Assembly (NCBI GenBank): GCA_964057225.1
Contig: OZ059897.1
Coordinates: forward strand, 11,904,001-11,968,000
Origin: Auanema rhodensis
Taxonomy: Eukaryota; Animalia; Nematoda
DNA: 64,000 nt
Reading direction: 5' to 3'
Positions within the stretch are counted from its first letter, which is position 1, and each line of letters starts with the position of its first letter. The notes under the pieces are model-generated. The model searched no databases. It worked only from the letters and a program-made list of their open reading frames with translations, and was not told the origin of the DNA. Both the position numbers and the translations under genes were made by a program. Positions 23,491 to 61,302 of this stretch are shown here, one piece after another.

Positions 23491-26400
23491 CTAGTAAGCT
23501 GGTTTCATCTGGTTAATGATGCTATTGGGAAACTGTTGATGAGCTGCCGAACCGCCCTGTTGGGTATAGCGTTGAATATTTTCCAACGGTGTAATCATAT
23601 TAAAGCTGAAAAGTTTAAAAAAATATTGATAGGTTGAAGAAATAGTTTGAACATACCCAGTCGGCCTTTCTGTGGATTTGATGTTGTTCTGATATTCAAA
23701 ATATGTTCTGGGATTTCGGAAATGGAGCAGCTGAGTGAATGCAGAGTTTGGAATTCCAGAATTGTATGGATTCGTTTGATTAGCAACAGAGACGCTGTTC
23801 ATCATAGCTTGATTCATTTGACCTGAAAATAGTAAACATATTGTTTTTTCTTTTTGTAGGAACAAAACTACAGTAATCTCGAGATACTGTAATTGTAGTT
23901 TTAAACCATTTTTGAAAAATGGAAAATAACCGAGAATAGAAGAATCCCTCAAGTTAAAACGTTGCTTGTACTTTCAGTTTCCTCTTCTCACGATCAAAAA
24001 ATGACTGGACTTGCGCGACGGGTGTGTTTCACGTCTGCACTCTCTATTGGCTGCTGGTTTCATTCGGTAACTATCGTACTCTCATCAGACAGCACACAGT
24101 CTAGACATTCTGTCGGATTGGCTGTCTGGCTCTCTGTCTGTGTTTGGTTATACAAAACCAGGTCAACTTCTAGCAATCATCAGTTAGAGTCTACAGAAGA
24201 TGAAGAGAAGATGGGGACAATGAAAGCAATGTCCCTCTAATTCCCTTTTCCCTCCCACCTAAACATACTCTCTATCTTTCTTTCGTTTTTTTGCTTCTCC
24301 TTTCCCTTTTTCAGATTCCGGAACGAATAGTGCATGCTAAGGGATCTAGATAGAATATCAGATAGTCAGACAAACAGAGAAAGAGAGAAAGAAAAAGAGA
24401 AGAGTTAACGAGACATCGAAATTTTATAGTTGTCACTGTACGTCGAACTGTAAAAAACCGCTGGCGACGACAATCACTAGGCTTTCGAACCCCCCAACAT
24501 TGCCATCGATTTAGCCGGTTTTAGGTCTTCAAAGAGAAGGAAACAAAAACGAAATCGAAAGGTAATTAAGGAAGAAACTTATGTTGCTTCGGGCAAAAAT
24601 TAAAAAAAAAAGGATTATAACGTTTTTTTCTCGGTTTCATCCTACTCATTCACACCCTCCTTCTCTTTTAGCTATTAGTATAAAATAATTCATAGAATAT
24701 AGCCTATAATTAAGAATTAAATATAATTACTTACTCAATGCAAAGTTTTGAGCATCATGAGATTCCGTCATTCCGGGTACAGCAGGGTTCCATAAATCTA
24801 GTTGTTCGGAACTAAAATCATTATTACGGAAACTGTAATTTTCTAGTTTTAAAAAAAAAATGTTTAAATGTAATACTTCATTCCAGACGTCCGAGTTCGG
24901 TCAGAATGCTTTGTCATGTGCTTCTGGAGATACGTGGCTTGAGTGTATGATTTTCCACAGAATGGGCATATATGAACCTAAAATATAAAATTTTAATTTA
25001 TATAATTATATATAACAAACCTTAAGATGTTTTGATTCTTTATGCTTTGGAATATGATCCAATAAACTTTGTTCATCAGCAAAACATTTATAACAACTAA
25101 AAAATTATTAAATTATATGTATAATTAATATTTTTTTAAAAATATGTTCTACCTATTGCACTTATATGGCTTATCAGTTTGATGACATCTTGAATGAGAC
25201 TGAAGATTACTTAATTGACTAAATGCTTTTTCACATCCAGTGAATTTACACTATAAATATTATTATATTATATATTATTCTATATAATTATTGAAAACCT
25301 TATATGGTTTTTCTCCTGTATGTGTTCTTATATGTTGTTGTAAATGTGACAACTGTGTGAACTGCAAATAATTATTTTTACTTTTCTTTTTGTCATTTTT
25401 CCATTGATTTCAATCAAAATGGCCCTTTTTTTTGCAATTGGCTGTCTGAAGGATATAGATTTCCAGATGAGTTGAGAAAAAAAAAGATGAGGAAATATAA
25501 AAAATGAGAGGGTGGATTGAAAAAAGGGGTTATAGATGATTCACAAAAAAATACAAAGACCTTGAGCCCGCAGGCAGAAACCGGACTAACCGGCGCATAA
25601 AAAATATCTAACAATCGTCGAAAAAACGACTGGCGATCAAAAGTACTACAGGAAATGGAGAGAGGAGAAAGAAACCCAAATAGATGGAAAAGGAGGACTG
25701 AGGCGGACGTACTTTACTGGAAAAGCGATTTGATGGTTGTTCTAATGACCCTGTCCATGTCTTCTAGTTAGCAGATGGATCACTTTCTATGCCTTAATAC
25801 GGTAAGGCTATAAGATTCAAAGTGATGGGAACACGGAATAAGTGAAAGTTACGGTATCTTTCGCCCGTCTTTCTTTAGCATTTGAAGGATTGCTAGGTTA
25901 TTCCGTATTCAAAATCCTATTTTAAATCATTTGAATTGATATTTTATTTGAATTATACCATACTTTCTTCCTCACAATTGAGTTATTCAAACCGTGATGT
26001 CTCTTCTAAATAATTTTACAAAGAAAGTTACAAAAAAACTGAGAGGCGTGACGAGAAATGTAAAAAGAGATTCAGATTAGAAAAAAAATGAAGAGAGTCT
26101 CAATGTCTTATACTCACTTTTCTTTTTTTTTGTTTAAAAATATTTATTTGTTTCTTTTCACTTCTTCTCCCTTTTCTCTCTCTCTCTCTCTTAGTGCTTC
26201 ATACATACACACACCCTTAGTTCTCCTTTTCAATCTTTTCGAAACTCGGAAATGTTGCGAAGAGAGCTGTTTTTTGCGTTTGCTAAACAAACTTGAGCAG
26301 ATCTCCTTTCTATTTCTCTCTTTTCCTGTCATGCACTCTAGATGAACCAAAAAACGTCTGGGCTAGCTAAGAACTGAGTGAAAGAAAGTGCCTACATTCC

Positions 26401-29345
26401 TAGAGGGGGGAGTACATCAGAGAAAAAATAGATTAAGAGAGCGAGAAAGAGAAGGAAGATGATGGTTTGAGAGAGAAAGGGTGCAGCTTCCGCTTTTTAC
26501 ATCACAAACTCGAAAAGGAATCCTGAAGCATTTGGGAAGAATACGTTATACTTGATATGTTTTCACTTTTATCATTGGTTTTTGTCTAAATGTGGACATG
26601 AGTCGAAGTGAAGAAAAAAACCAAAAGAAATGCAAGATAACTTTAGCATTAATGACTGAAAAATGCAAAATGAACATGAAAAACGAATTAAAATGAATAA
26701 GAAATAAGGAAAATATGAGTATTTTGAAATTTTCTCTACTTACTATATACTGTAAGAATACGGTGGCCTGTGGTTGGCTGGTACACACGTACAGTACACA
26801 AGGAGGAGGTAACGTCAGGTCATTGCGGGCGCATAGCGCAATAATCAAAATCAAAATATATTTTATAATTATAATTATAAAAATGTATAATTATATTTAA
26901 AAATATAAAAATAATTAAAAAATAAAATATAATATTAAAGAGTATTGAAAGGATTTCTCTAATAGTAATAGATTTTTAAGAATATCTATATAATATTATC
27001 TTATTTTCAATCAATATGCATGTCTATTGTTTCATTTTTGTTTCAAAAAATTATTGTCTTCCAATATTTCCTTGTTGAAACGTTTTTTTTGGGTTCATCC
27101 GTAAATTGCATCCACTGACAGGTCTTTCATTTATGATTGAACTTGCTGTATATTGGGAGAAAGATAATGCTGGAACGGGGTGTAGGAGAAAGAATCAATA
27201 ATTGGTTTGAATTTCTATTGTTTGCCCTTAAAAAACGGCTGGACAAGTCGACAATCGATCGAGCCTTGTTGAAGTTGGGGGCCCGATTGAACTTCGATGA
27301 GAAAAACGACGTCTGCGATGGATGGTAAAGACGAACATCCAACATCACAGCCAGCTTAGAATTTTCAAAGATCATTGTTTATAATAAAGAAACTTAAACT
27401 ATTTAAATTTTAAAAATTAAAAAAAGTGTATATAAGTAAATCAATAAAATATAAATAGTTTAAATCTAAAATTGACCGTATTTAATGAAAAAAAATTAAA
27501 AAAAAACGAAGCTGAACAGCTGTTTCATTTTTTGATACAAAAATTTATGACTGAATCAGATAGCAAAAAATTAAATGGAACATATGGACACATTAAGAAC
27601 ACGATGATCTTATTGTCTACCTTCATATAGGTCTTATCACAATAAAAAACGACATTTTTTTTTATTTTGCGTTTTATTTTAAAAGAAAAAAGCAGACGTT
27701 GGCTCAAGGTTGGGTTCAAATAAGTAGAGAATAAAAAAATAAAAACTTTTGTTGTAACGGAATAGAGAAACGATAAGATAAATCAATAAATAAAAAATTA
27801 AAAAAGAAAAATTAAAAGATGAAAATAATTTGAAAATGAAACGAACCTTTTTGCCACAATACTGACAGGGTCCGAATGGTTTGATACCCAAATGTATTCT
27901 CATATGTTGCGAGAGATAGGAACTATTGGCAAACGATTTAATGCACTAAATTAATAATAATAATTAGTATAATAATATATTTAATATAAATAAATTAGTT
28001 GAGTTATAAGATTGTTTAAGCTTAAACATGTACCTGATTGCATTTATAAGGTTTAGCCTCCCGCATCTGCATCTGCTGCTGCAGTTGCCCGACGTCCGGT
28101 TTGGTCTCAAACTGAAGAATATATAGGTAAATGGTTTAAAATATAATATATTAATAAGTTAAATAAAACTTTTGACTATGTATCATCATATTCAATTTAT
28201 ATATTTTTTTAATTTTTAGTATAAAAAATAGAATTAATCTAATAAACCGTAAGAGATTTGATAGTCTCAGTCTAGCCACTGGAGTACAAAAAGTTCAATA
28301 AACTTTTCATTTAATTTAACAAAAATGAGATATTATAAGAAAAAATAGAATAAGAAAAGTTGCAAAAATTTAAAGACAAAGTTTGCTCGAGTGCAAAAAT
28401 GAAGAGGAACAGAGAGAGAGAAAAGGTAAAGATGAAGAAAACGACGGGAGCTTTTTTTGCATCAATTACGAGACTATTATCGTTTCGGGAAACGGCTGCC
28501 GGCCACTTTTTTCTATCACTTCGGCCTTAAAAGAGACCACGAGGACATCGTCGACACCAAATGTGACTTCAGATTTCTATTATGAAAATGATGCACATTA
28601 AACGAGGACAATTATAGCAATGACAACAGTTTTTGGCCACCAAAACACGATGAATATTGGCTGAATGATTGATAACTATCTTATAGGTATATTTTTATTT
28701 ATAATAATAATTATTATATATAATAATTATAATAATAAAAGAATTATATATGTTTTTTTTTAAATAAAAAAAAATATATATGCATTTCAAGCTTATATTG
28801 TGATACAAGAAGAATAGGTGGTAGCTGGTATGCACGCCAATATTTGGGGGCGGAGTCAGAAAGGTGTGTACTAGTGGAAGCGACAAAAATGAAAAAGAGG
28901 ATAGAGAAATAGGAATAAGAACAGAAGGTTTTAGATATGAAGAGAGAGAGAGAGATAGAGAGAGAGAGTGAGAGAGAGAGAGAGAGAAAGAAATAGAGAA
29001 GAGAGGGAGAGAATGCAACCTGTATTCATGTTCGAACTTGTAAACTTTTTTTTTTTAAATTTGACTTGCACGTTGTTCACGTGTTTTGAAAACTCGTGTG
29101 TCAGTTATAACGGGTATTGTGATATACACTCTAATTATAAATATAAATCTTCTTATAGTATTAATTAAAAATAATTAAATCAATAAGTTCTAGAATATAT
29201 TAAATTGATAAATTTCTATATCAGGTGTCAAGCCTTTGTTCAAAAAGTGAATAAAAAAAATGCTTCCGTTCGTTCTCGAATGAGATAAAAAAAATGTTTG
29301 CATGAAAAATAACTTTTTTGAAATTATGTAGTTAATAAAATAAAT

Positions 29346-34027: not shown

Positions 34028-34094
<67 letters not shown>

Positions 34095-38100: not shown

Positions 38101-40668
38101 ATTTAGTTCATTTACAAAGTTTTAAAGTTGACATGAATGCTTCTAAGCTTTCTTTTTTTGTCATCATCAGTATGTAAATAGGCATTCGAGTCAATTGCTG
38201 AACCATCAGTTTTTTGCAGAAAAAAATGAGGAAGGGATATGATAAGTGAAATAGAAAATTATAAATCGATATTCATCGAGAAAAAAATTGTAGATTAATG
38301 TAAAATGGGTGTTCTCACGATGAGCTATTCTCGAGATTGGAGGATTGACGAGAGATGTAATCCGTCATCGGAAACGTGATTACCAAAAAAAGAAAGGCAA
38401 AAAATGGCTGGTGAAACAGATTGGCAAAAATCGAATATTATGGAAAAATTTGTAAAAAAGTTGTGTACAAACTCCTTTTTTTTCAAATTTCAAATATGAA
38501 AAATATGATGATTTTGAAGAGTAAAAAGATCTTATCGAAAAAAAAAAGATATTTAGAAAATACTTGATGTATAGATATAGAAAGTTTAAATAATAATAAT
38601 AATAATATATAAGTTATATAAACAGTAAATACGAAGAAGCTTTTTCAAGATAGTTTGCAGAGTTGTCGGATTGAACTATGGTGATCCGCAGTTGCCCTTA
38701 GACAATAATCTTGAAAAAAGCAATATCGAGAGAGAGGCAGCAGATACTGAATATTTGAAGTTTGATGATAAGACAGAAAAAAACGAAGATTTGTTAAAAG
38801 AACACAAGTAAACAGGATGTTTGAAAAGGAGATACAGCTTTCTGAGGTTGGTGAAAGTATAGAAAAAGTACATACAAGTCTGATGAACTGAGAAAAGAAA
38901 AATGAGGTAGAGTAGGAAAGGAGGATAGAGAGGGAGAGTGAGAGAAAGATAGAGAGATATTGGGGAGTGGACATTTGAATTCAATTGACTGGTCAGTCAA
39001 AGAAAAGAACTGAAGAGCCGAAAATGGAAACCAGCAAGTTGGGCATTGCTTTGAAAAAAGTACAGCTGAACGCTGGACAACGTCGATCAATGGGAGAGCA
39101 GAGAGCAAAAAATGAGTGGAAAAGAGAGAGAGAAAGGGAGATAGAGGGAAGGAGAGAGGAGTGAGATGGTGGCTGGCTCGTTGGTTGGTTGGCTAGGGGA
39201 GGTTTTGGACGATGACGGAACGACAGAACGACTTACGAGAGAAAGGGAAAAAGAGAGAAAATGAAAGATATAAAGAGAAAAAGGAAAAATGTGAAAGAGA
39301 GAGGGGAATTTCACGTTTTGAGATTGAATGAGTGGATTGGTGATGAGATAGCTGCTGTTGCTTATGCTGTTAGTCCGTATGATGAAGAGAGCAACAGATG
39401 AACAATACTAGAAAACGATAAAGAGGCAGCAGAGAGATGAGAAGACGTGGAAAGAAATACTGGAAGAAACGTCACAAATGAGGCAGAAAAGCCTTAAATG
39501 GTTGATGTCAAAAACGAAGAAGAAGAAGACGAAGAAGATGAAGAAGAAGCCAGGGTGAGACAACCGAGATGACGTGCCAAGCCTTCGATTCGTAAGGACA
39601 CAACATGGGCGGATCCCACTTATTGACCTTTGACACTCATAGTTAACAATGTTCTTTTTCACTTATAATGAAGTAATTATTTCAAAAATTACTTCAACCT
39701 ACCATATACAAGCTAATTTAATAATAATATAATATATTTTTTTAATAAATAAACAATTAATAATAAAAATAAAAAAAAAAGAAAGAAAAAAGAAGACGAA
39801 AGATGATGATGAAAACGCTAATTAAGTTGAAATAGAATAAAGTCAAAATTTGGTTTTATTATTAAGACTTGATGGATAAATTTTCATAAAAAATTCACAG
39901 ACAGACAAATCAAAAATGAAACAAATGTGAGACCAGGTAATGAACGAAGAGGTAGTGAGAGAGGTGTGGGAGGTGTTGGAGCTCAAGTCAAACGTACATA
40001 CACACCTGAACCGCTTACCGGAAATGTTCTTTTTTTTTTCTCTTGAATCCGTTTGATGTTTAATAATTGATTTTCATCGTTATTGCATTATTTATATTAT
40101 ATATCGTTAATGTTCAGGAAGAATATTAAGTTCATTTTTTTTTGTTCAAATTAGACAAAAAAAAACTCAAAAAACTCAAATAAATCGTTAATTGAATGTT
40201 GCAAATCGTTTTGATATTCATGTTGAATATGTTTCTTTTTATTATCTTCATTAATGTTATTTTAACTTTAAATATATTGCCTCAGGGTATATTTTTGAAC
40301 AAAAAAAAAGTGTTCGAAAAGAAATGTATCTACGGAACGTGAGTTCAAAAAGAGCAAGCACGATGTTCGAAATAGTGCTGTTGCCAAATTTTGTTTGCTC
40401 ATCACGTCGTCATTCTTTCGTTCGTGCAACGATGCCTGTATTCCATCTTAATGTACCTGCTTCCTCTCTCTCCTAATCTCGCTTTCTCTCTTTCTATCTC
40501 TCTCTATTTCTCTCGAAAAAATGAAAACCCACATGGCTTGCGTGAAGCATTTGAATTCATTTACGTACATCAAACGTTTTGCAATAGTTGCTGTTGCATT
40601 TGAATCTTATCCTCTTTTCAGTATATTCATACTTAACGAACTTTTCATTCTCATTGTCTTTTTTTCTC

Positions 40669-40757
<89 letters not shown>

Positions 40758-43700
40758 ACATATTTCTTCTTACTAGATATACAGTTTTATTATAAATTTA
40801 ATCAACATAAATATTTGAAGATATAGAAATAGCTAATTTCAACTAATTATATTTAATTTATATTTATAAAATCTTTACCGTATAATCTAGGCACCATATA
40901 TAGTTAAATCTATTAAAATGGAGATAAATGACAGAAGAAGATAAAAATGATGAAATGAGAAGGAAAAGAGTTACACGTGTTTCTTGCTCATTCAGTCATG
41001 TAATTTGAGTCCAAAGAGCCTGTAATTCAAGCGCGAAAACCAAAGAAAAAAAACGTCTGTTTCTCCTCAGTTGTATATTTCAACTGTAATCCTGATCGTG
41101 TACGTGGAATTTCCAGGCACGAACTCATTAGTTACTTGGACGACCAAACGGTAATAGATATAGTATGTGAATAGAAGAGAAGGACGACGAAATAATGACG
41201 AGCAACAAACTGTCTCCAAGGGCATCGGTAGCCATACGATGACAGACGTTTTTTATTTTTTTTCGCGGCATCATAGCCAATTTGAATATGGGTAAGTGGG
41301 TTGACTGATGATGATGAGATATTTCCGATTTGAATGTTGACCTGTTGAAACACGTTTGAGCCGACAAAACACATCTGTGCTCGGTCAATCGGTCATCAGA
41401 TGGAGTTTTCGAATAGACAACGAACATCTTTCCTCTTCTTGAACTTTTCTTTTTGAACTTTGTCCGATTATGCTATGGCACTTCAACGTCTCCAAGTTTT
41501 GGAACAAACTGATGCAATCAGATGAGAAAAATTTAGAAAATTTGAAAAATGAAGAAATAGCAGATAATCTTGATGATTGAAACATCTAACATTATTTTCT
41601 GATATTTGCTGCTATCTATCAGAATATTTAGTTTAATATGTATCTTTAGCACAAAGATATTATATTATTTTACTCAAAAAAATTGGAATAAATGAATTCA
41701 AAATTGAAATTTGAGAAGACTGTCCAATATTTTTTTTTCAATTCAAACGTTCATTTTTTTCTTTTTTCTCCGTTCCATTTACATTATTTGATACCCCAAA
41801 AAAACTATTTATCTATATATAATGAGTAAAAGACAAGAAGAAGAGATTTTCAAAAAGTTTCATTTTGTAAGGAAAGAAGAATCGTTGGAAAAGAGCTTAA
41901 GAGAGAGAGAGAGAGAGAGAGAAAGGGTAAAGCGGGTGGGTGTGGCAATTTCTCTTAAATTACAAATTTTTTTTTCTTTTAGCCAAATGTAGATGAAAAA
42001 AGGAATAAGAATTATAAGTTATTATTATAGAAATAACACGTGTAATAGATAAAATATAAAAATATGCAACATAATATACAAATTATATGAAATAGTTAGA
42101 ATGTTCTAGACGAACAACTTTATTTTTTATCCTTCCCTTTTAATATAATAAGGTAAATGGATTAAAAAGGAAAATGATGTGATAAAGCTTTCAAAAAAAT
42201 AAGAAAAAATGGCTAAAAAGCACATAGATGATATGAAGAAGGAAAATCAGCATATTAATTGAAAAAATGTTTGATGGAGCAGAGTTTTATGATTCTTCTT
42301 TCTGATTCAAAGATCGAATATGGATGAAGGTAAGCATTCGAGAAATACTAAAAGAGATAGAGGTCATAAAGAGAAACAGAGAGAGAGGGAGAGATGGTTA
42401 GAAAGAAGAAAAGAAGAAACATATTCAAAGTTAAAATTTTTGAAAAGGTTTGTGTGTTTCTTCATTTAACTTAACCATAGAAATGAATGTAACCAGATGT
42501 TCTCTTAGAAAGAAGATATTGATATGTCAAAGTATATATGCATATAGATTGTTATATACCATATATGAAGAAATGATAAGATGTATTCATATCAGAATAT
42601 TTCAGAAAACTAATGCAATTTGTTGAAAATGAATGCGCTACGCTTTGAATATGCTTGTCAAGTTTTAAACTTATCACTTCCTCAGGGAATTACATGAAAT
42701 AGAACTAACTAAACAAGAAGATGTCGACTAGATAAAGTGCTGATGTACTGATTTAAAGCGAAATAAAGGAAAATATTCGATATGGATACTCAACAAAGCG
42801 TTTTGTTCCTTTTTTTTCTTCTTTCTTTTGAATTGTTTCGATGGAATTTTGTAAAATAAGTTTTGCTAAAGAGAAATGAATCACAAGGTGTTCTCGATTG
42901 TTTCAGAGATAAATAATAGGAATACGGTAGAAATAGTAGACGATTTTACATGAAAATAATGATAAAATTACCAAATTAATAGAAGGAAAAACAAAACAGA
43001 ACCAAAAAAAACTTGGAGTAATAGACAGAAGCTCAAAAAAAAGGTAAATGATAGAAAAAAATATATGATGAGAGACTAAAAAAATTACAGAGAAACAGCG
43101 AAAAGAGAAAGAGCGAGAGAGAGAGAGAAAGTAAGAGAGATTTATAGAGACGAAAATGAAAGCTTCTTCGAACTGTTCAATCGATGATGCCGTTCCAAAT
43201 TTACTTTCATTTTGTTTCTTTAACTCTCTGCAACTCTTCTTTACCCTGCTCATTCACACGACTCAAACTGCAAGATCAAGAGTGAATACTTCTATCTCAC
43301 ACTCTGTACATGTTCGTTTTTCTCTTTTTCCAGTCTCATTTTCATATTTTCTCTCTTTCTTTTTTCTTTCTTTCAACAACGATATCACATATAGAAAACG
43401 ATAAGAGAGGGAGAGAGAGAGAGAGAGAGAGAAAGAAAATATGAAAGAGAGAGGGAGAGAGACAGGGAGAGAGAGAGAAAGATGAGACACAGGACCGTCA
43501 GCTTGATGTGCTTTTCCTTCCTGCACTATGATGTGCATCTCCTCGTTCCGTTTTATTTGCTCTTTACATAAAGTTTAACTGTTCATCTAAAGCTTCGTGC
43601 ACAACCATTTCTTCCATCCATCAGACACCCACCCTATCCAACAACTATCCCCCCTCTCACCCTCGCCCACCCCAACTACTTTTTCCTATTTCTCACTAAC

Positions 43701-45198
43701 TTTTCCTTTTTTGCTTCGATTTCTATTCTTTAGTTACCACAAACATTCTATGTGTTGTTCAATTTTCACGTAAAATTCACGTGAAAGCTATTAGATGTTC
43801 AGTTTCTTTATGTTCTATTGACGTAAGAAGAGATTGTATTCCGAAAAGAAACAAAAATGAATTCTGATAAGACTTTGCTAAGAATTTCTATCAAAGCTTA
43901 GCCGGAAATGTTTAAAAACTCTTGATCAAATATAAATATATTTGAATGTCACTTTCAAATGACAAATGTTTTTTAAATGTTTTGAAATTCCGAAATCATC
44001 AACTTCAGATGTTTCTTTTAAAATTTCAATTGAAATCTTATAATAAGTTATTTACATTTAAAGATTTTAATAAAATAATGAAGAAATCTTCAATTTAGTT
44101 ATTAGATTATATTCAAAAATTTGTATATATGTATCTATATTAGTTCAAAATAATTTTCATATTATTATGAAAAAAACAAAGTGAATAATCTCAAATAAAA
44201 ATAAAGTAAAATATACAAAATAAATTATAATTTGTATATATAATTATATTTAAAATAATTAAAGTTTTTTTAGAAATTGAAAATCATTCAATAAAAAAAG
44301 TTATAATTGTTTGTTTAAAATTTTGAATATTATGATTCAAAAATCGTTAAAAATACATATACAACAATAATATTGTATTGTATTTATGTATAGTTTATAA
44401 TAAATATAAATAAAATTTTAAGAATTAAAAAAAAAAAGAAAAAAAATTGAAAAAGAAGAACAAACGTACTGCATTCATTTGCGAATTACGGCTGAACTGT
44501 GAAAGCATTGGATACTGTAGAAGTGACTGATTTTGAAATGAAAACAAATCTTAAAAGAAGATAATCTATATATGTTTTTATGTATTTTATATTATAAAAC
44601 CTTGATTGTTAAAATTTGTAAACGTTGATGATTCCAGTGACTGTTGAAGAGCAGCATTAAGATTTGGAATTTGTGTAGTAGAAGCAGATGATACAGATGG
44701 TGGTTGCTATAACTTATGCTTATAAATTATGAATAATATAAATTATTATTATTATTATTTCAAAATATATCAAAAATAAATGAGATAAGCTTTACAAACA
44801 GACCTGTTCGGTTGGCGCTGCAGCGCTTTGCTGACTACCTTCTGAAGACGAATCAGTAGATCTTGATTGAGAACGAGCTGGAAAAAAAAAAAAAAATTAA
44901 AATTCAAAGAAATAAAATAGTTTTTGTATACTTGTATCACTGTTGTTTAATCCATTATTCTGTCCAAAATGTCCAGAATTCAGCTGATGATCTGATAAAG
45001 GGAGAGATTGATTGAACGAACCGTCTATAATACATTTCATTTCTATGTAGTATGACTCAAAAGAAGAAGAAAAAAGTGTCTTTTTCAATATAGTTTATTG
45101 AATAAAAAGAGTTTTAAAAAGAAAATTATAAAAATAATTTTATTTTTTATTTTTGAAAATTAAATTTGAAAGGATTTACCCAATGTCTGAGTCTGCAT
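23491..45198 (-). CDS. lin-29: LIN-29 five-C2H2 zinc-finger transcription factor, long (a-type) isoform
   Basis: Exons 45198-45180, 45024-44932, 44877-44804, 44706-44601, 44549-44470, 28111-28034, 27945-27847, 25361-25299, 25250-25153, 25096-25021, 24977-24877, 24811-24735, 23822-23657 and 23605-23491 splice in frame. They give MQTQTLDGSFN...FETKPDVGQLQQQMQMREAKPYKC...HMRIHLGIKPFGPC...GFNMITPLENIQRY. The short-isoform Met is at 28072. Confidence 0.95.
34030..34095. repeat. (CT)n microsatellite
   Basis: Near-perfect CT dinucleotide run. Confidence 0.95.
36021..36111 (-). other. Candidate alternative first exon of lin-29 ending in ATG
   Basis: ATG|GTAAGC at 36023-36015, phase 0 and compatible with exon 28111 (M-FETKPDVG). 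The 5' boundary is uncertain. Confidence 0.45.
40664..40755. repeat. (CT)n microsatellite
   Basis: About 75-nt perfect CT run with an imperfect left flank. Confidence 0.95.
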
Positions 45199-46178
45199 GC
45201 TTAATGGAAGAGTACGATGAAAAGTATCACGATCGTTGATTACATCCAACTATAAATTAAAATAATATAAAACATATAATATATTAATTAAATATATTTA
45301 TTATACTTATATTTATTTATTTTTATTGAAATTTTAAAATTTTATTGTTAATTCTTTAACGAGAGATGAGTTAAACTGAAAGTTTCTGAATGAAAGACGT
45401 TTTGTAACGAAAATGGTTTTGGGCCCGATGGTACAGCTGCGTTCCAAAAATGGTTTCGAGAAAACAAAAAAAAACATTTGAAATGAAAAGAAAAAAAAAG
45501 ATGAACTAAGAAAGAAAATAAAAAGTAATGATAAAGATTATATTATAATAAATATAATATATAGTTAAATGAATAATATATAATATAAAGTTAAATTTGA
45601 AAAAGATATAGTAATTAAAATATATTTAACCTTTTTTTTCATTATTAGACTACTTTTATATAATTTATATATATATATATATAATCAAGTATAGTAGTAT
45701 AGTAAAAATTATAATAAGTTTAATAATAGTTTTTAAGGATGAAAATCTTTTTCCTTTTTTTTTCAAAAAATAAAAAAGATTTCAAACTGATTTGACCTGG
45801 AAACAAAATTTCAATTTAAGAACAAAACATATGTGTCCATTGAAAAATCAAAAAGTAACAAAAGGATTTGTAAAAAGGATTGTTTTCCAAGAAAAAGTAT
45901 AGAATCTTCCTTATTCATTATACTATTTGGCACGCAATTCAATTTCTTTTTAACTTTTATTTCAAAATTATTCTTAAATTATTTTATTTTTTGAATTATA
46001 TTTTATATTTTCATATAATAAATATTATATTTAATATAAATTTCATAATAACATTAATTAATTAAAGATTTTTCAATATAGTTAAATACAAAAATAAAGA
46101 AGAAAGTAGAGGATTGAAAAGAACTGTCATCTGTTTCCTTATACGTAGTCTATGCTTGTTTTCCTTTTGATGCTCCCC

Positions 46179-46179
<1 letters not shown>

Positions 46180-46236
<57 letters not shown>

Positions 46237-46243
46237 TCTCTCT
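46180..46243. repeat. (CT)n microsatellite
   Basis: CT run. Confidence 0.95.
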
Positions 46244-47404
46244 TCTGATCTTCCTTTCTCTTTGAATCCTCTGTATAGCATTCTTTAATTCAAGATTTGC
46301 AATACAAGACAAGAGAACTGTCCTTCAATTCTTTTTTTTATAACTATAATTTGAACTTTTCATGCAATAGTACTTTCATTTTAATTTCTATATAGATGCT
46401 TTGAATTATAAAATATATCTAAATATTCAAATTATATTATACATATAGTATATAGTTTATAATATATATATATATAAGTATTCATTAAGAAATAAAAAAC
46501 TCTTTCTCACATTCTTCCTCTAATTTTCGGAATTTTTAACGAAAAGGTTACGGTAACTTATATATTGGGGGCTATCATAACAAAGTCTCAGATCAAAGAT
46601 CTTTTAACTTTTCAACATAGCAACTTTTCCTTTTTTTTACGGAAATTCAAATTTTACTTTTGATTTTTAAATCTCGAAACATTTAATCATAGTAACTGTC
46701 ATGTATGACATCTATGAATAAACTCAAAGTAAAGCCTTTTCAAACATTTTTTTTTGAAAATTGCCGCTCATTTGATTTTTTTTGTTCTTCTGACCCAAGA
46801 GAGCCTGAGAAGATACTGAATTTGGATTGAACGCTGAGTAAGGGTTGGAAAAATTCTTTTCTAACCTCGTGCCACCCGGCGACAGTCCGGCCTGGAATTC
46901 AACCGTTTTTATACCGCAAAAGGTTCGGGCCTAGTCAGCCTGCCATGCTCGGCTGCTGAGAACATTGAGAAAAAGTTGAAGAAAAAGATTCATCATCTAC
47001 AGTATTAAGGATTATAGACTAAACTTGCCCTGTCGATTTCAAGATTTCAAATTAAATAATGAGGATTATGGTTAATAATGAATTGGAATAATTAGAAGAA
47101 AAGCTTATGCTATGACATCTAGGAAATAAGAAAAATTTTGAATTACAAATTTAAAAATAAAGGAATATAGAAAACGATGTTGTTATCATCAGTTTTATAA
47201 TATACATAGTATAATAAGAATATATATAATATTAAAATATATTTATAGAAATATAGGTTTTAAAATAAAATATAAAGTTGAAACTTAGGTTTTAATATAT
47301 AAAAAGAAAAGAAAAGAGAATATATGAATAATGAAAAAATCATTTGACTGCATAGCATATGTTGCATAACATTTCTTTGTAAAAATTAAATTGAAAAAAC
47401 TTAC

Positions 47405-47445: not shown

Positions 47446-48217
47446 CTATCATTATAATTACTTAATAAATATTATTAAATAATTATATGGAATAGCTAAT
47501 TGTTTGAAGAAAAAAATAATAATTTGAATTAAGAATATAGAATTTCTATGTATTATTGTATGTGAAGTGTTCAAATGAAAAAGAGGATGATGAAAGAAGA
47601 ATTGAAATTTCTCAAAAAGAAGAAAAAAAAGGAAGGCGGAGCATATCTAACTGTATTGAGAAGATAGGTAGTAAGTAAAGATAGTACAAGAGTTTAAAAT
47701 AAGGAAGAAGAGGTAGAGAGAGAGAGGGAGAGATAGTGAAAGAGAGAGAGAGAGATAGAGAGCGAATGAGAGAGATAGAAAGAGATTTTAGATGAATGCA
47801 TAGAAGGAGATTAAGAATAATTAGGAACAAAGCAAATTCAATTTAACAAAATTACAAAATTCCAGCAATTATTATATAAATTTTCGTATATCATATTACA
47901 ATTATATTTTTATTAACTTTATACTTTATATTTAAATAAAAATATGAATCAAAGATGAAAGATAAATAATAATCCAGCTATTTCTGTTTTGTTCAAAATT
48001 TTTCAATTTTTTGAGAAAAAAAAGTTAAATTTCCTATTTCCCACGTACGTAGTTAAGATTGTTTTGCTTTCTTTTGATAATGAAACATTGCTCCAACTTA
48101 ATTATTTCCCGTTTAATTTATATAAAGCATATATGAATATGTTACATTTATCAATTTATATATATATAGATTGAAATAAAAACTTATTTTTATAATTTAT
48201 ATTTGAGATTAACTTAC

Positions 48218-48456
48218 CAATTAATGGTTTATGTATACAGTGAGTAGAGCTGTGTAGCAATTAATGATTATTAAAGATCTATTTAGATCGTAGTTAGTTA
48301 TAGTCTTTGAGACGAAAATTTTACAGTATAATCTCTTGGAGACCACACAAATCAATCTTATAGATTGAACAGGTTACTGTAGGTTGGGAGTTAGACTCCA
48401 GATGAAAACTTGATCGCTTCGCGATCTGAAGCACAACTGCAGCACGCTCTCAGAGC
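48218..48456 (-). promoter_or_regulatory. lin-29a non-coding first exon with an array of LIN-41 response element (LRE) hairpins
   Basis: Bounded by a TTATTTCAG acceptor (48457) and a G|GTAAG donor (48217); contains no ATG; six tri-loop hairpins, including GGAGT-CTA-ACTCC. Confidence 0.8.
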
Positions 48457-48859
48457 CTGAAATAAATATTCTTAATGTTAATTACATATAGTTAAAAAGA
48501 CAGTGTGATATGAGAAAAAATGAAATAGAAAAGAGACAAAAATTAGATTAAAAAAAAAAGATTTGTATAGAAAGAAACATCTTTTTCTTCTTTATAATTC
48601 TTTTTAAGGAAACGTTTTTGAATGATAAGACTGTGGAGGGTCGAGTCAGAAATACTCGAAACCAGTTTATAGATGGAATTACCAGAAACGTATTCTGTAT
48701 ATTGGCAACAGCAAGTGCGTATATACATCTATTGCTGAAATTTTTTAAAAAAATGTTGAAAAGGCAGAAGATGGTGTTAAATTGCCTGAAAGAGAGAAAG
48801 TGAAATAGAGAGTGAAAGGCGAAGAGGAATAGAGAAGTATACAAATGATCAAAAATAAA

Positions 48860-48860
48860 A

Positions 48861-48907
<47 letters not shown>

Positions 48908-48914
48908 AGAGAGA

Positions 48915-48952
<38 letters not shown>

Positions 48953-49008
48953 AAGAGAGAGAGAGAGTGAGAGAGAAAGAGCGAGAGAGAGAAAGAGAGA
49001 GAGAGAGA
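48860..49008. repeat. Imperfect (GA)n microsatellite upstream of lin-29a exon 1
   Basis: About 150-nt GA run. Confidence 0.95.
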
Positions 49009-49230
49009 CATTGGACAATGATGACATAGCAACATAACTTTAGCACAAGAAACTGAAAAGTTACTATAACAATATTGATAAGAAGCTGTCAATTAACACA
49101 AAAAATTGCAGGCGTTAAGCTACGAAGAAAAGTTTAAAATGGTTTTTCTCACTGACTTAATCACCTTTCTTCAATCAAAAAAAAACGGAGCGTTGTATTC
49201 TGACGCTAAAACGAATGGAAAAAGATCAGG

Positions 49231-49262
49231 CTTCATGACTTCATGACTTCATGACTTCATGA
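49231..49262. repeat. (CTTCATGA)x4 tandem repeat
   Basis: Four consecutive 8-mers, each containing the palindrome TCATGA. Confidence 0.85.
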
Positions 49263-52200
49263 ATGTTATATCTCTTTATTAGAGTTTTCAGATAAATGAA
49301 GTTCATTAGATGAAGAAGAGCTATGTTTATGAATAAAAATTTTTTGAAATAGAAGAATGCTACGGAACAGGGTGGAGTTACGATGAGGAGGAAAACGATG
49401 GGCTATAGTTGTACGAAGACAACTTTTTCACAGTCTATCTAACGTTCAAGAGATACAATATGACGATGACAACGACGAACATCGACAACGACGACAACGA
49501 TCATGACGAAGAAGAGGCAAATGGAGGAGAACAGGCAAATTACAAATGAAGCAGAAAAGGCAATATAGATTGAGATAGAGCAAGTTATAGTAAGCCAAAT
49601 ATGATATGATAATTCTTCATCAGGAGAGAACGTCTATGGTTAGCTTATCGTTATAGCTTAACTTCCTCTCTTCCTCTCTCTCTCCTTCCATCTCTCTTTC
49701 TCTTTCGCTCTTTTTTTCATTCATACATTTATTACTTCTTTCTATTAAAGTTTTTTGTTTCTTTTTGACCATATCAGCTTTTTCATAACTTTTTCATCTC
49801 CGTGAACTCAAAGTTTAAACGAAAAAATATCGAAAAGGTAGCCATTGGCTGTTTATATTACAAGAAATGAAAGAAGAAGCGCAACAAGAACGAAGTAAAG
49901 ATGAATCTCCTCCTGAACGTGGAACTGAATAACCCGTTATGGAAAACTGGTGGTGGCCCAATGTCCGAAAAAAACGGTCGGACCGTCATCGATATTCTTC
50001 TTTAACCCCTTTGCGTGTATCTCTCTCTCTCTCTCCTATTCTGCTGAGGACAACAACGACCACGTCAACGTGCTTGATGGCCAGAAGAGATGTGTTAGCG
50101 TTAAAGGGTAGGTTGGGGTTAGAAGAAAAGGATCACTGCTTGGTCTTCATCATTTTGATTCTATGTTTCACTTCGTCTTCTCTTCCTCGTCACTCTATGT
50201 CATTATTTCGCATTTCTCTTCTAAATTCAATCTCTTTTTCGTTTTTCTCTCATATCTATCTCTCTCATTTCGTTGTACACACTCACTACCTCGTTGTCGG
50301 CTAAAAAACGCCTGAAGATAGAAAAGAACGAGATTGTAAGGTGAAAGACATGTTTCATATCTTGCCCTGAACGATATATACTTACTGTTCGTTGTCTACG
50401 TATGGTTCTTCAGAAACAGACCACGATTGATCAAACTTTTATAATATCTTATCTATTACCAGTATCAACTAACAAAATCTAGTAGACTACAACTTTTTGG
50501 CAAACTTGGCAAGCAATCAAAATGAACTTTTCGTTTGGGACTTCTCAGAATTTTTTATCCTCACCCGTATTCAGAGAGCTGGGTTTGTTTTCTTCATTGA
50601 AGTACCGAAATATTGATAATATTCTACTCCTTATTAATAAGTTCCGTACGCGCCATGGGTGCTTAAGGAAATAAAAAACGCAACGTTTCAGCTTTTTTGA
50701 TCAATCGATTGGCAAAACACTTCGTCTTCTTTGAATAGAAAACGAAAAAGATTTTTTTTCTTGAAATAATCAGGAAACACAGCTGACAGTTGGTTGCTTC
50801 CAGGATAAACTAGATTAAATATGATTTGAATCAAAGTATCATATGAAAATGTTTTTTTATAATTTGATCTAAAATAAATTGACAAATCAATCAATAGGCT
50901 TTTGGTAATATTCTGGAAAATTGAGCAAATATCTGAGTGAATATTTCTTTTTTAAAGTTAAGCTTATGACTGAAACATCGTTTCAAATATGGTCAAGAAA
51001 AAAATTTGATCTGTTTTCAGTCATCAGAATAAGAAAATGATGAAAGATTTTGAAAAATCATCGAATAGAAAGAAAATTGAAAATAAAAAATGGAACTTAA
51101 CGAGAGTATTGAGTGAAGAAACAAACTATTATAAGAAAGAAGTTCAGCTGTTTAGAGTTTTTTTAGGAAGAACAAAATCCTCACATTACACCTTTAAGCT
51201 TAAATCCAAAAAAAAGAAGCATTTATCGATTTTAAAGATAGGAAAAATTCTATAATAGATGTCTAAAAATAAATTTGTTTTTATCTAATTGTTAAAATAA
51301 AAATATAAATTAAGTATAGAAGTAAAAATTGTTTAATAAAATAGATTTTTTTCGACTAAATTAAAGGCAGGATATGAAGAAGAAGAGAAAGACAAAGAAG
51401 AAATCATTCTATTTAAGAACTCATATGGTGCTTAAGGTGGAAAAACATCTGGTGGTACTTCGGAGCAATGAAAAAGATGAATTGAAAGCTAAAAAACAGT
51501 GGGTGAAGCTCGAGAAGGCAGAGGGAAACGAAAGAAATATTTATATAAGAATTATATAATATATTTAAAATATGAATTTCATTAAACTGTGACGAAGAAG
51601 AAGAAGAATACGACGATGATGAAGAAGATGAAGAAAAAGAAGGAAAAAATGCAATTTTTTCGAGGAAGCTATGACCGATACTAGAAAAGATTCGAAACTT
51701 TTTTAGGACGAAAAACGTTAAGCATATAAGGCATAAGAAGCCTCTTCACTGAGCCAATCTGCGTATTTCCTGTGACAATCAATCGTGCTCAGAGATGAAA
51801 AAGGTTTTAAAAATCGTATGTACTGTTTTTTGTATTTCAAACTCTTTACCTTCTCTCTATATGCTTACGTCTAATCTTTCTCTTTCTTTCTATTATATCT
51901 TCCTCTCCTTCATTCTTTTTCTCTCTCACCACTTCATCTCTCAATTTCTTATTATGTCTAGCTCACTGTCTCACTCAATCATTCTTCCTCTCTTAAATCT
52001 ATTACCTTATGTTTCAATCTCTTCACATAATATCTCGGAACGGTCAAACTGTTGCTCAATGAGGTTTTCCGACGTTCCATCTCTCTTTCTCTCACTCCCT
52101 CTTCTCATTTCCTATGTTCCTCTACATCTATCAGGTGTTCTCTCACTTTTCAATGAAACTGTTGAGGTTTTGAATCCTACGTTGGAAGAACAAATAAAGT

Positions 52201-55408: not shown

Positions 55409-56079
55409 TTTTTCTGTTTATGAAATAAGTTTTTGCCTAAATTTGCCTATGTTACATGTGTTAATTTTCAACATTTTACTCTTCTATAGGTGAATGATTG
55501 TTCTGATTTTTCTGCATAGTTTTTCTTTTACCTTATCCAATGATCACTGAATAAATTATTTTTATTTTTACAATGTTCTCTATGAGTTTTACCTGAAAAA
55601 AATTCTTAAATTTCTACATTAAGTTGATTACCATTTTTCTGCTCTAGCTTTCGGTGCGAGACCAATATTAGTTGCATCTTGTGTTTGGAAAGAAAGGAGT
55701 TTACCCTATCACCGATTTAGAGCTTGGGAGACAAATGAGACAACACAAAAGTGTATGATTTAGCAATTTTAAATTATTTTGTGGTTCCATTAATATTTCT
55801 TATCATAACAAAACTAGAAAATAAGGAGAAAGTGAACAAGTTAAAGCTTTAGGCATCTCTTATACTATTGTATAGGAGAAAATAATTATAGTAGTTTCAT
55901 ACAGTAAATTTGGTATAATTCGAATCCAAATGTATAATAAATAAAGTCAAATTCTCAATATCAGTCTTTTTGGATTTGCAGAAATATAACACACTACTAC
56001 GATTCGTAAGCATTTTTTAAAAAATATATACTGATTATGAAATCATTTCGTAGCTAACTAAAATAATATACATGTATAC

Positions 56080-56455
56080 TAGAGTTGGACACGACACGAA
56101 AATAGAAGTGTCGATTTTAAATTTTTGTCGAAAAGATTTGTCGATTTGTGTAGATATGTCGAATTTTATCAAAAAAACAATAGAAAACAGTATTTTCTGC
56201 ACATTTGATTACTCTATATCAATGTGACTATCCCTCTCTTCTTCTATTTCTTTTTCTTCTTCTTCCTCTGTTTCAATATGTTCCCCTTTTCATGTTGAGA
56301 AATAATTGAATTTTAATTTAAAAGCTTTTTTTAGGTGAATTTTCCTTACGGGATTAATAAAACGGTTGTCGATAATTTAATTTCATAGTTGATTATCAAT
56401 TCGATCCTGATAATCGACTATCGTGTCGACATATCGATTTCGATTCCTAACTCTT
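56080..56455. mobile_element. hAT-like MITE, copy 1
   Basis: Termini TAGAGTTGG...CCTAACTCTT, a 7/8-matching 8-bp TSD (ATGTATAC/ATGTAAAC), and dense subterminal (G)TCGA repeats at both ends. Confidence 0.6.
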
Positions 56456-57245
56456 ATGTAAACATATTGTTTTTCCATTTTTTTTTGTAGTTCCATTTCG
56501 GAAATTTTCATAATAATATACATAGTGTTGCAGCAAAGATATTATTGTTTCATTATGAAGAAATAAATAAATTTCTATATTTTATATTAAATACAAATCT
56601 GCTTATCACGGATGTTTTATTGAACATTTTAAATTTGTTTCAGACCTTTATTGTTGTTTTTCTTCATTTTTCTCATATTTGTTTGACACCCGGCTGGTTT
56701 TGGTAGTTCCGACTCAGAAATTTTAGTGTTTTTTCATATGTACCTCTAAAGTATTATTATACATGATTACCTAAGCACATTTGATTCTCATTCGAAAGTA
56801 TCTGCATAGAGGATAATTAAAAATCTAATTAATTCTTTTAAAATTATATGCAAAGAATAATAACAGAGCATAAAGAGAAAAAGTAACAAAAATTGTCAAC
56901 ATACCGTAACTAATTTTTGCTCAACTCCATTGTGGACTTCACACACAACGAAGAACATCCCTTCAACCAAATAATATAGAAGCTCAAGCTTTACCACGTT
57001 CCATCCTTTTTCAAATAATTTAGCCATGTTTTAATAGTGTTTTACTTGAGTACGAATAATAAATTTTTAAATACTGCCTCATTTAATGAATGATGTTATT
57101 AACCAATTTAAACAACAAAATCTATTAAATTTATATAAGAAGTATTATAACAGTCCAGAATCGTTTATGTAAATTCTTGTTAAATCTATAGTTTGCATTA
57201 TATTTTTGAATTTTATAATTAAATCAATTTCAGCGTTTTAATTAT

Positions 57246-60649: not shown

Positions 60650-61302
60650 TATTTTTTGCCTAAATTTGCCTATGTTACATGTGTTAATTTTCAACATTTT
60701 ACTCTTCTATAGGTGAATGATTGTTCTGATTTTTCTGCATAGTTTTTCTTTTACCTTATCCAATGATCACTGAATAAATTATTTTTATTTTTACAATGTT
60801 CTCTATGAGTTTTACCTGAAAAAAATTCTTAAATTTCTACATTAAGTTGATTACCATTTTTCTGCTCTAGCTTTCGGTGCGAGACCAATATTAGTTGCAT
60901 CTTGTGTTTGGAAAGAAAGGAGTTTACCCTATCACCGATTTAGAGCTTGGGAGACAAATGAGACAACACAAAAGTGTATGATTTAGCAATTTTAAATTAT
61001 TTTGTGGTTCCATTAATATTTCTTATCATAACAAAACTAGAAAATAAGGAGAAAGTGAACAAGTTAAAGCTTTAGGCATCTCTTATACTATTGTATAGGA
61101 GAAAATAATTATAGTAGTTTCATACAGTAAATTTGGTATAATTCGAATCCAAATGTATAATAAATAAAGTCAAATTCTCAATATCAGTCTTTTTGGATTT
61201 GCAGAAATATAACACACTACTACGATTCGTAAGCATTTTTTAAAAAATATATACTGATTATGAAATCATTTCGTAGCTAACTAAAATAATATACATGTAT
61301 AC

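What the first reader, a model, noticed from the sequence alone, without database searches (positions are those of the whole stretch)
48303..48456. Six-hairpin LIN-41/TRIM71 response-element array in the lin-29a leader exon
Seen: on the minus strand, 154 nt hold six tri-loop hairpins spaced about 20-35 nt apart. They are GCTC-TGA-GAGC (48456-48446), GATCGC-GAA-GCGATC (48426-48412), GGAGT-CTA-ACTCC (48399-48387), TCAATCT-ATA-AGATTGA (48368-48352), TCTC-CAA-GAGA (48342-48332) and GTCT-CAA-AGAC (48313-48303). All six have A at loop position 3. Three close with U-A and three with C-G, and the stem sequences are unrelated to each other. Known: the LIN-41 NHL domain reads tri-loop hairpins with a purine at position 3 and preferably a U-A closing pair, and it represses C. 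elegans lin-29a through its 5'UTR. From memory, the crystallised lin-29a element is GGAGUCCAACUCC, one loop base from the third hairpin here. Inference: the let-7/LIN-41/lin-29a switch is conserved here by shape, as an expanded multivalent platform mixing strong and weak sites.
Basis: partly seen in the sequence, partly recalled or inferred. Interest (0 to 1): 0.85.

Follow-up and report, generated by a model that had tools for sequence, protein, structure and literature searches.

The report
LIN-41 hairpin array in lin-29a leader
A 239-base untranslated leader exon upstream of a nematode lin-29 gene carries five stable three-base-loop RNA hairpins matching the known C. elegans binding sites of the timing protein LIN-41, so this is another species' copy of a known switch, not a new mechanism.

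Summary
All six tri-loop hairpins are in the sequence, at the stated coordinates on the minus strand. This is far more than chance gives. Dinucleotide shuffles give 0.7 tri-loops per 154 nt against 6 observed. No other place in the 64-kb window, on either strand, has 4 or more LRE-like tri-loops.

The hairpins lie in a 239-nt ATG-free segment (48456-48218). It is bounded by a tttcag acceptor and a GTAAGT donor. It lies on the same strand as, and 20 kb upstream of, six exons encoding five C2H2 fingers colinear with LIN-29-family proteins.

[quoted passage not shown] Its crystallised element GGAGUCCAACUCC differs from hairpin 3 by one loop base.

- Hairpin 1 is not predicted to form (p <= 0.03), and its motif is absent from the published LRE table. 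The array therefore has five sites: three strong-class U-A and two weak C-G.
- The array is not expanded. C. elegans has four U-A sites, and the summed model scores are about equal (4.5 vs 4.3).

Verdict: a new member of a known kind, of moderate interest.

The parts
48218..48456 (-). Putative lin-29a exon 1 (5'UTR leader), 239 nt, no ATG
   Evidence: Bounded by tttcag|G upstream and G|GTAAGTT downstream. ATG-free; only 3% of background minus-strand windows are. z = -3.79. Four 'RNA?' runs hold 0.39 of the sampled words of 48100-48700, against 0.37 expected if only this exon is present.
48446..48456 (-). H1 GCUC-UGA-GAGC, C-G closing; probably not a functional LRE
   Evidence: Present. Closing-pair p = 0.00-0.03 globally and 0.25 in local folding. 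CUGAG is absent from the LRE table.
48412..48426 (-). H2 GAUCGC-GAA-GCGAUC, C-G closing, weak-class LRE (CGAAG:7 = 0.23)
   Evidence: p = 0.66-0.67. Table value. Its counterpart is the C. elegans UUCGC-CUA-GCGAA hairpin, with 4 of 5 stem pairs identical and one compensatory.
48387..48399 (-). H3 GGAGU-CUA-ACUCC, U-A closing, strong-class LRE (UCUAA:7 = 1.05); counterpart of C. elegans SL I
   Evidence: 12 of 13 nt identical to the crystallised lin-29A RNA. p = 0.55-0.72. Table value.
48352..48368 (-). H4 UCAAUCU-AUA-AGAUUGA, 7-bp stem, U-A closing, strong-class LRE (UAUAA:7 = 1.63); positional counterpart of C. elegans SL II
   Evidence: p = 0.73-0.81. Table value. Both species have a 7-bp stem in this position, and 5 of 7 pairs differ on both sides.
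48326..48348 (-). H5 UCUC-CAA-GAGA (core 48342-48332), extendable to 10 bp with G-U pairs; C-G closing, weak-class LRE (CCAAG:7 = 0.30)
   Evidence: p = 0.91-0.97. Table value.
48303..48313 (-). H6 GUCU-CAA-AGAC, U-A closing, strong-class LRE (UCAAA:7 = 1.25); same 5-mer as C. elegans SL III and SL IV
   Evidence: p = 0.67-0.78. Table value. Comparison.
48276..48289 (-). H7 GAUCU-AAAU-AGAUC, a tetraloop hairpin preceded by CUAC; positional counterpart of C. elegans SL IV but not an LRE by the 3-nt rule
   Evidence: p = 0.87. C. elegans has ...CUAC-UAGAUAU-CAA-AUAUCUA. Loops larger than 3 nt were not enriched in RNAcompete, and a 5-nt-loop control hairpin showed no detectable binding.
48434..48450 (-). 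5' arm of a predicted long-range helix that encloses H2-H7
   Evidence: Pairs with 48263-48246, with pair probabilities up to 0.99. Prediction only.
48246..48263 (-). 3' arm of the predicted long-range helix
44932..45055 (-). Putative exon 2: 15 nt of 5'UTR, then the ATG at 45040
   Evidence: AG acceptor and GT donor read. The reading frame stays open through the next two putative exons (hand-spliced). Inferred; no RNA evidence and no database match.
44804..44877 (-). Putative exon 3 (Ser-rich coding)
   Evidence: ttccag acceptor and GT donor; frame continuous with exon 2. Inferred.
44601..44706 (-). Putative exon 4 (QPPSVSSAS...NFNNQ)
   Evidence: Stop-free stretch; splice signals. Inferred.
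24880..28111 (-). Six exons encoding five C2H2 fingers of a LIN-29-family protein (28111-28034, 27945-27847, 25361-25299, 25250-25153, 25096-25021, 24977 to about 24880)
   Evidence: tblastn of P0174 and P0175 (named 'Protein LIN-29 c' by its source) is colinear on the minus strand; the second exon (ZF1-ZF2) is 100% identical to P0174 and 90% to P0175.

Best explanation
[quoted passage not shown] It is an untranslated leader exon whose RNA folds into a row of short hairpins with exactly three loop bases. Five of them (H2-H6) fit the published LIN-41 response element. Three have the preferred U-A closing pair and A at loop position III (strong class). Two have a C-G closing pair (weak class).

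By analogy with C. elegans, several LIN-41 molecules would bind these hairpins through the NHL domain, which reads their shape. Because the sites are in the 5'UTR, binding would block translation of LIN-29a until LIN-41 falls late in larval development.

Shown here: the hairpins, their statistical excess, their predicted stability, their match to the published motif table, the exon-like boundaries, the lack of ATG, and a LIN-29-family gene downstream on the same strand.

Inferred: that the exon is spliced onto lin-29 mRNA, that LIN-41 binds it, and that repression follows.
For: - Hairpins verified.
- Excess over shuffles and over the whole window.
- Stable in all folding contexts.
- Strand-specific: all six have A at loop position III on the lin-29 strand. 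On the opposite strand the same region has only four hairpins passing a looser purine-at-III filter, all with G at III.
- 5-mers UCUAA, UAUAA and UCAAA are 'Strong' in the published LRE table when well paired; CGAAG and CCAAG are 'Weak'.
- Crystallised lin-29A RNA GGAGUCCAACUCC against GGAGUCUAACUCC here.
- C. elegans exon 1 (194 nt) has the same order: a C-G hairpin with core UCGC/GCGA, then SL I, then a 7-bp U-A hairpin, then a UCAAA hairpin, then a palindrome after CUAC.
- C. elegans LIN-41 acts on lin-29A through this first 5'UTR exon. Disrupting two of the four LREs relieves repression, and compensatory mutations restore it (and supplement text).
- Exon signals and absence of ATG.
- RNA-run word share of 0.39, close to the exon-only expectation of 0.37.
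- Downstream LIN-29-family fingers on the same strand.
Against: - The four runs are only guessed to be RNA and may be one data set filed four times.
- Putative coding exons 2-4 have no database match.
- Only one other species (C. elegans, from a paper) could be compared. The apparent compensatory changes rest on positional homology, not on an alignment, and any two unrelated hairpins would look 'compensatory' when laid side by side.
- The LRE model has low genome-wide predictive power (r = 0.158).
- The pairing-probability bins were assumed to be of equal width.
- LIN-41 and let-7 of this species were not examined.
Confidence: 0.75

Rival explanations
1. A structured lin-29a leader that works independently of LIN-41. 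The hairpins and the enclosing long-range helix could slow scanning ribosomes in general, or could be read by another hairpin-binding protein.
For: The exon is unusually stable (z = -3.79). It is predicted to form a closed multi-hairpin domain. It contains two tetraloop hairpins that are not LREs.
Against: General structure does not explain the specific excess of 3-nt loops (5 of 7 against 11.5% in the background). It does not explain A at position III in all six, nor the U-A/C-G closing pairs that match the published LRE table. It does not explain the near-identity of H3 to a crystallised LIN-41 ligand.
Confidence: 0.1
2. DNA-level palindromes: binding sites for dimeric transcription factors in a lin-29 promoter or enhancer, not an RNA element.
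For: Each element is a perfect DNA palindrome with a 3-bp spacer, and the region lies upstream of the lin-29 coding exons.
Against: The six stems are unrelated in sequence, so they cannot serve one factor. The loops are strand-asymmetric (A at III in 6 of 6 on the gene strand). The segment has acceptor and donor signals and no ATG. RNA-type runs hold an exon-sized share of it. The C. elegans counterpart is a transcribed exon shown to act as RNA.
Confidence: 0.04
3. Chance clustering of short palindromes in AT-rich non-coding DNA, or the exon of an unrelated non-coding transcript.
For: Individual 4-bp stems are weak, and tri-loop palindromes occur about 1.3 times per 154 nt across the window.
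Against: P is about 2e-4 or lower in shuffles. The cluster is unique in 128 kb of window sequence plus 352 kb of other loci (both strands counted). It has a 12/13 match and the same hairpin order as the published lin-29A exon. It lies on the same strand as lin-29.
Confidence: 0.03

Closest known systems
[quoted passage not shown] 2017 as cited in, and Kumari et al. 2018, PMC5908797)
   Same: Both are the first, untranslated, ATG-free exon of lin-29a and carry a row of tri-loop hairpins. SL I is 12/13 identical to H3. The order is the same: a C-G hairpin with UCGC/GCGA core, then SL I, then a 7-bp U-A hairpin, then a UCAAA hairpin, then a palindrome after CUAC. Summed model score is 4.28 in C. 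elegans and 4.48 here.
   Different: The exon is 239 nt here against 194 nt. There are three U-A sites here against four. The SL IV counterpart has a 4-nt loop here. There is an extra C-G site (H5) with a long G-U-containing stem. Most stem sequences differ. No binding or reporter data exist for this species.
C. elegans mab-10 3'UTR LRE cluster (Kumari et al. 2018)
   Same: Several tri-loop hairpins with U-A closing pairs and A at position III, read by the same NHL pocket. At least two sites are needed for regulation.
   Different: The mab-10 cluster is in a 3'UTR, where LIN-41 binding causes mRNA decay rather than translational repression. The gene is different and the sequences are not homologous.
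Roquin constitutive decay element (CDE), a tri-loop hairpin read by shape (own knowledge, not tested here)
   Same: A short stem with a three-base loop, recognised mainly by shape rather than by stem sequence, and often acting in multiple copies.
   Different: It is read by the ROQ domain, not an NHL propeller. Its loop is pyrimidine-purine-pyrimidine. It sits in 3'UTRs and drives decay, and it is a vertebrate immune regulator.

Membership tests
LIN-41 response element (LRE) array, Kumari et al. 2018 | Stem-loop with exactly three loop nucleotides | tested here: met
   Six palindromes have 3-nt spacers. Five are predicted to form, with p = 0.55-0.97. H1 is not predicted to form (p <= 0.03).
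LIN-41 response element (LRE) array, Kumari et al. 2018 | U-A pair at stem positions -1/+1 (C-G tolerated, with much lower binding) | tested here: met
   H3, H4 and H6 close with U-A. H1, H2 and H5 close with C-G. The rule is stated.
LIN-41 response element (LRE) array, Kumari et al. 2018 | Purine (A preferred over G) at loop position III | tested here: met
   All six have A.
LIN-41 response element (LRE) array, Kumari et al. 2018 | The 5-mer and pairing bin are listed in the published LRE score table | tested here: met
   UCUAA:7 = 1.05, UAUAA:7 = 1.63 and UCAAA:7 = 1.25 are Strong. CCAAG:7 = 0.30 and CGAAG:7 = 0.23 are Weak. CUGAG (H1) is not listed. Placing these in bin 7 assumes seven equal-width bins of log2 p.
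LIN-41 response element (LRE) array, Kumari et al. 2018 | At least two LREs in one UTR of the target mRNA | tested here: met
   Three strong-class and two weak-class sites lie within 125 nt. The requirement is stated.
LIN-41 response element (LRE) array, Kumari et al. 2018 | Direct binding by the LIN-41 NHL domain and LIN-41-dependent repression | not testable with these tools
   Needs EMSA or fluorescence polarisation and reporter assays.
lin-29a 5'UTR exon 1 (orthology to the C. elegans exon) | The exon is spliced to lin-29 coding exons | tested here: inconclusive
   It lies on the same strand, 20 kb upstream of the finger exons. It has consensus acceptor and donor signals and no ATG. Putative coding exons start 3.2 kb downstream.
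lin-29a 5'UTR exon 1 (orthology to the C. elegans exon) | Sequence or positional homology to the published 194-nt exon | tested here: met
   SL I is 12/13 identical. The C-G hairpin shares 4 of 5 identical pairs. The order of elements is the same. The comparison was made element by element, not by a full alignment.
LIN-29 / ZNF362-384 / rotund-type C2H2 transcription factors | Five C2H2 fingers colinear with family members, including the FE[ST]KPDVGQLQ...REAKPYKC lead-in | tested here: met
   tblastn of P0174 and P0175 (named 'Protein LIN-29 c' by its source) to the window is colinear at 28078-24897 on the minus strand. The name comes from the source's own annotation.

The most novel reading that the evidence does not exclude
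The LRE array evolves by site turnover under selection for total valency rather than for individual sites. SL I and one UCAAA site are kept. The SL IV counterpart has drifted to a non-binding tetraloop. New sites (H5, and a stronger UAUAA loop in H4) keep the summed predicted LIN-41 affinity nearly constant (4.5 against 4.3). The whole array may also be presented on a closed multi-branch domain formed by a long-range helix between the two ends of the exon.
Probability: 0.3. Interest if true: 0.5.

Novelty: new member of a known kind. Interest (0 to 1): 0.35.

Why it matters
LIN-41/TRIM71 recognises RNA by shape, and its binding model predicts targets poorly genome-wide (r = 0.158 in the original paper). 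A second species' lin-29a leader keeps the number, loop size, loop III adenine and closing pairs of the hairpins while most stem sequences differ. This is comparative support that the tri-loop array is the selected feature, and that the LIN-41 to lin-29a link extends beyond C. elegans.

It also gives a natural set of variant sites for binding and reporter tests: CUA against CCA loops, C-G-closed sites, and a tetraloop in place of SL IV. It does not reveal a new mechanism.

Tried and rejected
There are therefore no junction or 5'-end reads.
2. The search of protein representatives with a 33-aa finger exon was swamped by poly-zinc-finger proteins and returned no LIN-29.
3. The search for homologous proteins with the putative exon-2 stretch found no candidate. 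Its length filter kept full-length LIN-29 proteins, including that of C. elegans, out of reach, so the C. elegans locus could not be fetched as a reference.
4. A two-hairpin DNA pattern that matches both this window and the C. elegans exon was scanned in metagenome contigs. It gave 18 hits at 44-75% GC with no arrays, which is about the number expected by chance.
5. Loci around LIN-29-family fragments of Necator americanus and Aphelenchus avenae (10 kb flanks) contain no LRE-like cluster, and no upstream genes were available to walk along.
6. Rfam has no match in 47500-49500.
7. Earlier scan notes held nothing on this locus.
8. I did not type the 194-nt C. elegans exon into a tool (rule on long sequences). 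It was therefore compared hairpin by hairpin only, and its pairing bins were assumed rather than computed.
9. 'Expanded platform' and 'six sites' were considered and rejected, as explained in the summary and the full report.

Full report
**Observation**

On the minus strand the six claimed elements are all present at the stated coordinates:
- H1 GCTC-TGA-GAGC (48456-48446)
- H2 GATCGC-GAA-GCGATC (48426-48412)
- H3 GGAGT-CTA-ACTCC (48399-48387)
- H4 TCAATCT-ATA-AGATTGA (48368-48352)
- H5 TCTC-CAA-GAGA (48342-48332)
- H6 GTCT-CAA-AGAC (48313-48303)

All six have A at loop position III. H3, H4 and H6 close with U-A. H1, H2 and H5 close with C-G.

**Is it more than chance?**

Yes, by several tests.
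- In 5000 dinucleotide-preserving shuffles of the 154-nt core, the mean number of tri-loop hairpins with stems of at least 4 bp is 0.69, against 6 observed (P about 2e-4).
- With the LRE-like filter (A at III, U-A or C-G closing) the shuffle mean is 0.11 and no shuffle exceeds 2.
- Sliding a 154-nt frame over the whole window on both strands, this is the only place with 4 or more such hairpins.
- In 176 kb of unrelated loci fetched later, the maximum is 3.
- Thermodynamic folding agrees. The exon's MFE is -57.7 kcal/mol, z = -3.79, and 0 of 200 shuffles fold as well.
- H2-H6 appear in the MFE and centroid structures. Their closing-pair probabilities are 0.55-0.97 whether the exon is folded alone, behind an SL1 leader, with the next exon, or within pre-mRNA flanks.
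- Among 534 non-overlapping 239-nt background windows, the mean number of stable LRE-like tri-loops is 0.15. The only window reaching 5 is the one overlapping this exon, and the next best has 3.
- Tri-loops make up 11.5% of hairpin loops in background MFE structures, but 5 of 7 here.

One correction: H1 is not predicted to form (p = 0.00-0.03 globally, 0.25 in local folding). Its bases join a long-range helix, 48450-48434 with 48263-48246, with pair probabilities up to 0.99. That helix encloses the other hairpins.

**What the segment is**

- The hairpins lie in a 239-nt stretch, 48456-48218. It is preceded by tatttatttcag and followed by GTAAGTT, the nematode acceptor (or trans-splice) and donor consensus.
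- It contains no ATG. Only 3% of background minus-strand windows of this size lack one, and 1.7% of mononucleotide shuffles do.
- Four runs labelled 'RNA?' hold 0.39 of the sampled 31-mers of 48100-48700. If only the 239-nt exon were present, the expected share is 209/571 = 0.37, whereas a genomic holder would hold nearly all. This is indirect. The run type is guessed, and the four equal-sized runs may be one data set.
- About 3.2 kb downstream on the same strand are three putative exons with consensus splice sites and one continuous frame: 45055-44932 (with an ATG at 45040), 44877-44804 and 44706-44601. They have no database match and are inferred.
- About 20 kb downstream, still on the minus strand, six exons (28111 to about 24880) encode five C2H2 fingers. 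Fragment proteins from strongylid and filarial nematodes match them at 92-100%.
- tblastn of a complete five-finger protein (P0174) and of P0175, which its source names 'Protein LIN-29 c', is colinear with these exons. The gene is therefore a LIN-29-family orthologue. The name rests on the source's annotation and on my own knowledge of LIN-29.

**Comparison with the known system**

- Kumari et al. 2018 (PMC5908797) showed that the LIN-41 NHL domain reads hairpins with exactly three loop bases. The key features are a U-A pair at -1/+1 and A or G at loop position III.
[quoted passage not shown] That exon (194 nt) contains four LREs. Disrupting two of them relieves repression in vivo, and compensatory mutations restore it (and supplement text).
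- Binding in a 5'UTR causes translational repression, whereas binding in a 3'UTR causes decay (citing Aeschimann et al. 2017, which is not in the library).
H3 differs from it only at loop position II.
- From the construct and probe sequences in the supplement, the C. elegans exon carries, in order:
  - a C-G-closed tri-loop, UUCGC-CUA-GCGAA
  - SL I, GGAGU-CCA-ACUCC
  - SL II, CUCUUUU-CUG-AAAAGAG
  - SL III, UCGAU-CAA-AUCGA
  - SL IV, UAGAUAU-CAA-AUAUCUA, preceded by CUAC
- The window exon carries, in the same order:
  - H2, with the same UCGC/GCGA core and one compensatory outer pair
  - H3, with a stem identical to SL I
  - H4, also 7 bp and U-A-closed, with 5 of 7 pairs different on both sides
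  - H5
  - H6, with the same UCAAA 5-mer as SL III and SL IV
  - H7, a palindrome after CUAC (GAUCU-AAAU-AGAUC, 48289-48276) with a four-base loop, which therefore fails the three-base rule
- The two C. elegans sites whose joint disruption abolishes regulation (SL I and SL III) thus have the best-preserved counterparts here.

Caution: with only two species and no full alignment, the 'compensatory' differences rest on positional homology. They are not a covariation test.

**Scoring with the published model**

Using the paper's Supplementary Table 3, and placing all five stable hairpins in the top pairing bin, the scores are:
- H4 UAUAA: 1.63 (Strong)
- H6 UCAAA: 1.25 (Strong)
- H3 UCUAA: 1.05 (Strong)
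- H5 CCAAG: 0.30 (Weak)
- H2 CGAAG: 0.23 (Weak)
- H1 CUGAG: not listed

The top-bin placement assumes seven equal-width bins of log2 p, so bin 7 is p of about 0.27 or more (method).

The sum is 4.48. The C. elegans elements, assumed to be in the top bin, give 0.77 + 0.75 + 1.25 + 1.25 + 0.25 = 4.28. The array here is therefore equivalent in valency, not expanded: three U-A sites against four, plus two weak sites against one.

**Mechanism proposed**

The exon is the 5' leader of lin-29a mRNA. Its RNA displays three strong-class and two weak-class LREs 23-33 nt apart, possibly on a closed multi-branch domain. LIN-41, which binds a single LRE with only micromolar affinity in C. elegans (Kd 1.3 uM), would bind multivalently and repress translation until its own level falls. 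The sequence features are shown. Splicing, binding and repression are inferred.

**Rivals**

- A LIN-41-independent structured leader. This does not explain the specific loop size, the loop III adenine or the closing pairs.
- DNA palindromes for transcription factors. The stems are unrelated, the loops are strand-asymmetric, and the segment has exon signals.
- Chance. This is excluded statistically.

**What failed**

- The representative-protein search was swamped by poly-zinc-finger proteins.
- The length filter of the homologue search kept full-length LIN-29 proteins out of reach.
- A DNA pattern shared by this exon and the C. elegans exon found only GC-rich hits in metagenomes, about as many as expected by chance.
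- 10-kb flanks of LIN-29-family fragments in Necator and Aphelenchus hold no array.
- Rfam has no match.
- Earlier scan notes say nothing about this locus.

**Verdict**

This is the orthologue, in another nematode, of a characterised C. elegans regulatory element. It is a new member of a known kind and of moderate interest. Its main value is as comparative support for shape-based conservation of LIN-41 sites, and as a natural panel of variant sites.

Noticed in passing
window 48434-48450 and 48246-48263 (minus strand): A predicted 15-bp interrupted long-range helix (pair probabilities up to 0.99) joins the 5' end of the exon to its 3' part. It encloses H2-H7 in one multi-branch domain and competes with H1. 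By eye, the C. elegans exon can also pair CCAAUUCGC near its 5' end with GCGAAUUUGG near its 3' end; this was not computed.
   Followed up: partly
window 48276-48289 (minus strand): Tetraloop hairpin GAUCU-AAAU-AGAUC after CUAC (p = 0.87). It sits where C. elegans has SL IV (a tri-loop, also after CUAC), which suggests loss or turnover of one LRE.
   Followed up: partly
window 1221-1405 (plus strand): This is the only other 239-nt window with three stable U-A-closed tri-loops with a purine at III: AUGAUUU-UAA-AAAUUAU, UUGUUCGU-CAA-ACGGAUAA and UACU-AUA-AGUA (p = 0.37-0.75). It could be a UTR with LRE-like sites or an AT-rich chance cluster. The gene context was not examined.
   Followed up: no
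window 56035-56706 and 61258-61929: Identical ORF sets recur 5.2 kb apart.
   Followed up: no
window 48861-49030 and many other places (e.g. 46150-46290, 40610-40760, 34030-34100): Long (CT)n/(GA)n microsatellites are scattered through the lin-29 introns and lie just upstream of exon 1.
   Followed up: no
L005, L006, L010, L011, L014, L016 (metagenome contigs, 44-46% GC): Six freshwater-type metagenome contigs share a nearly identical 46-nt element. It contains GTCGC-CCA-GCGAC, and most copies contain TGGAGT-CCA-ACTCCA. It is a conserved element of unknown nature in some non-nematode organism, met only because it matched the search pattern.
   Followed up: no
They fall in or next to a putative lin-29a coding exon. 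They were left out of all later searches.
   Followed up: no
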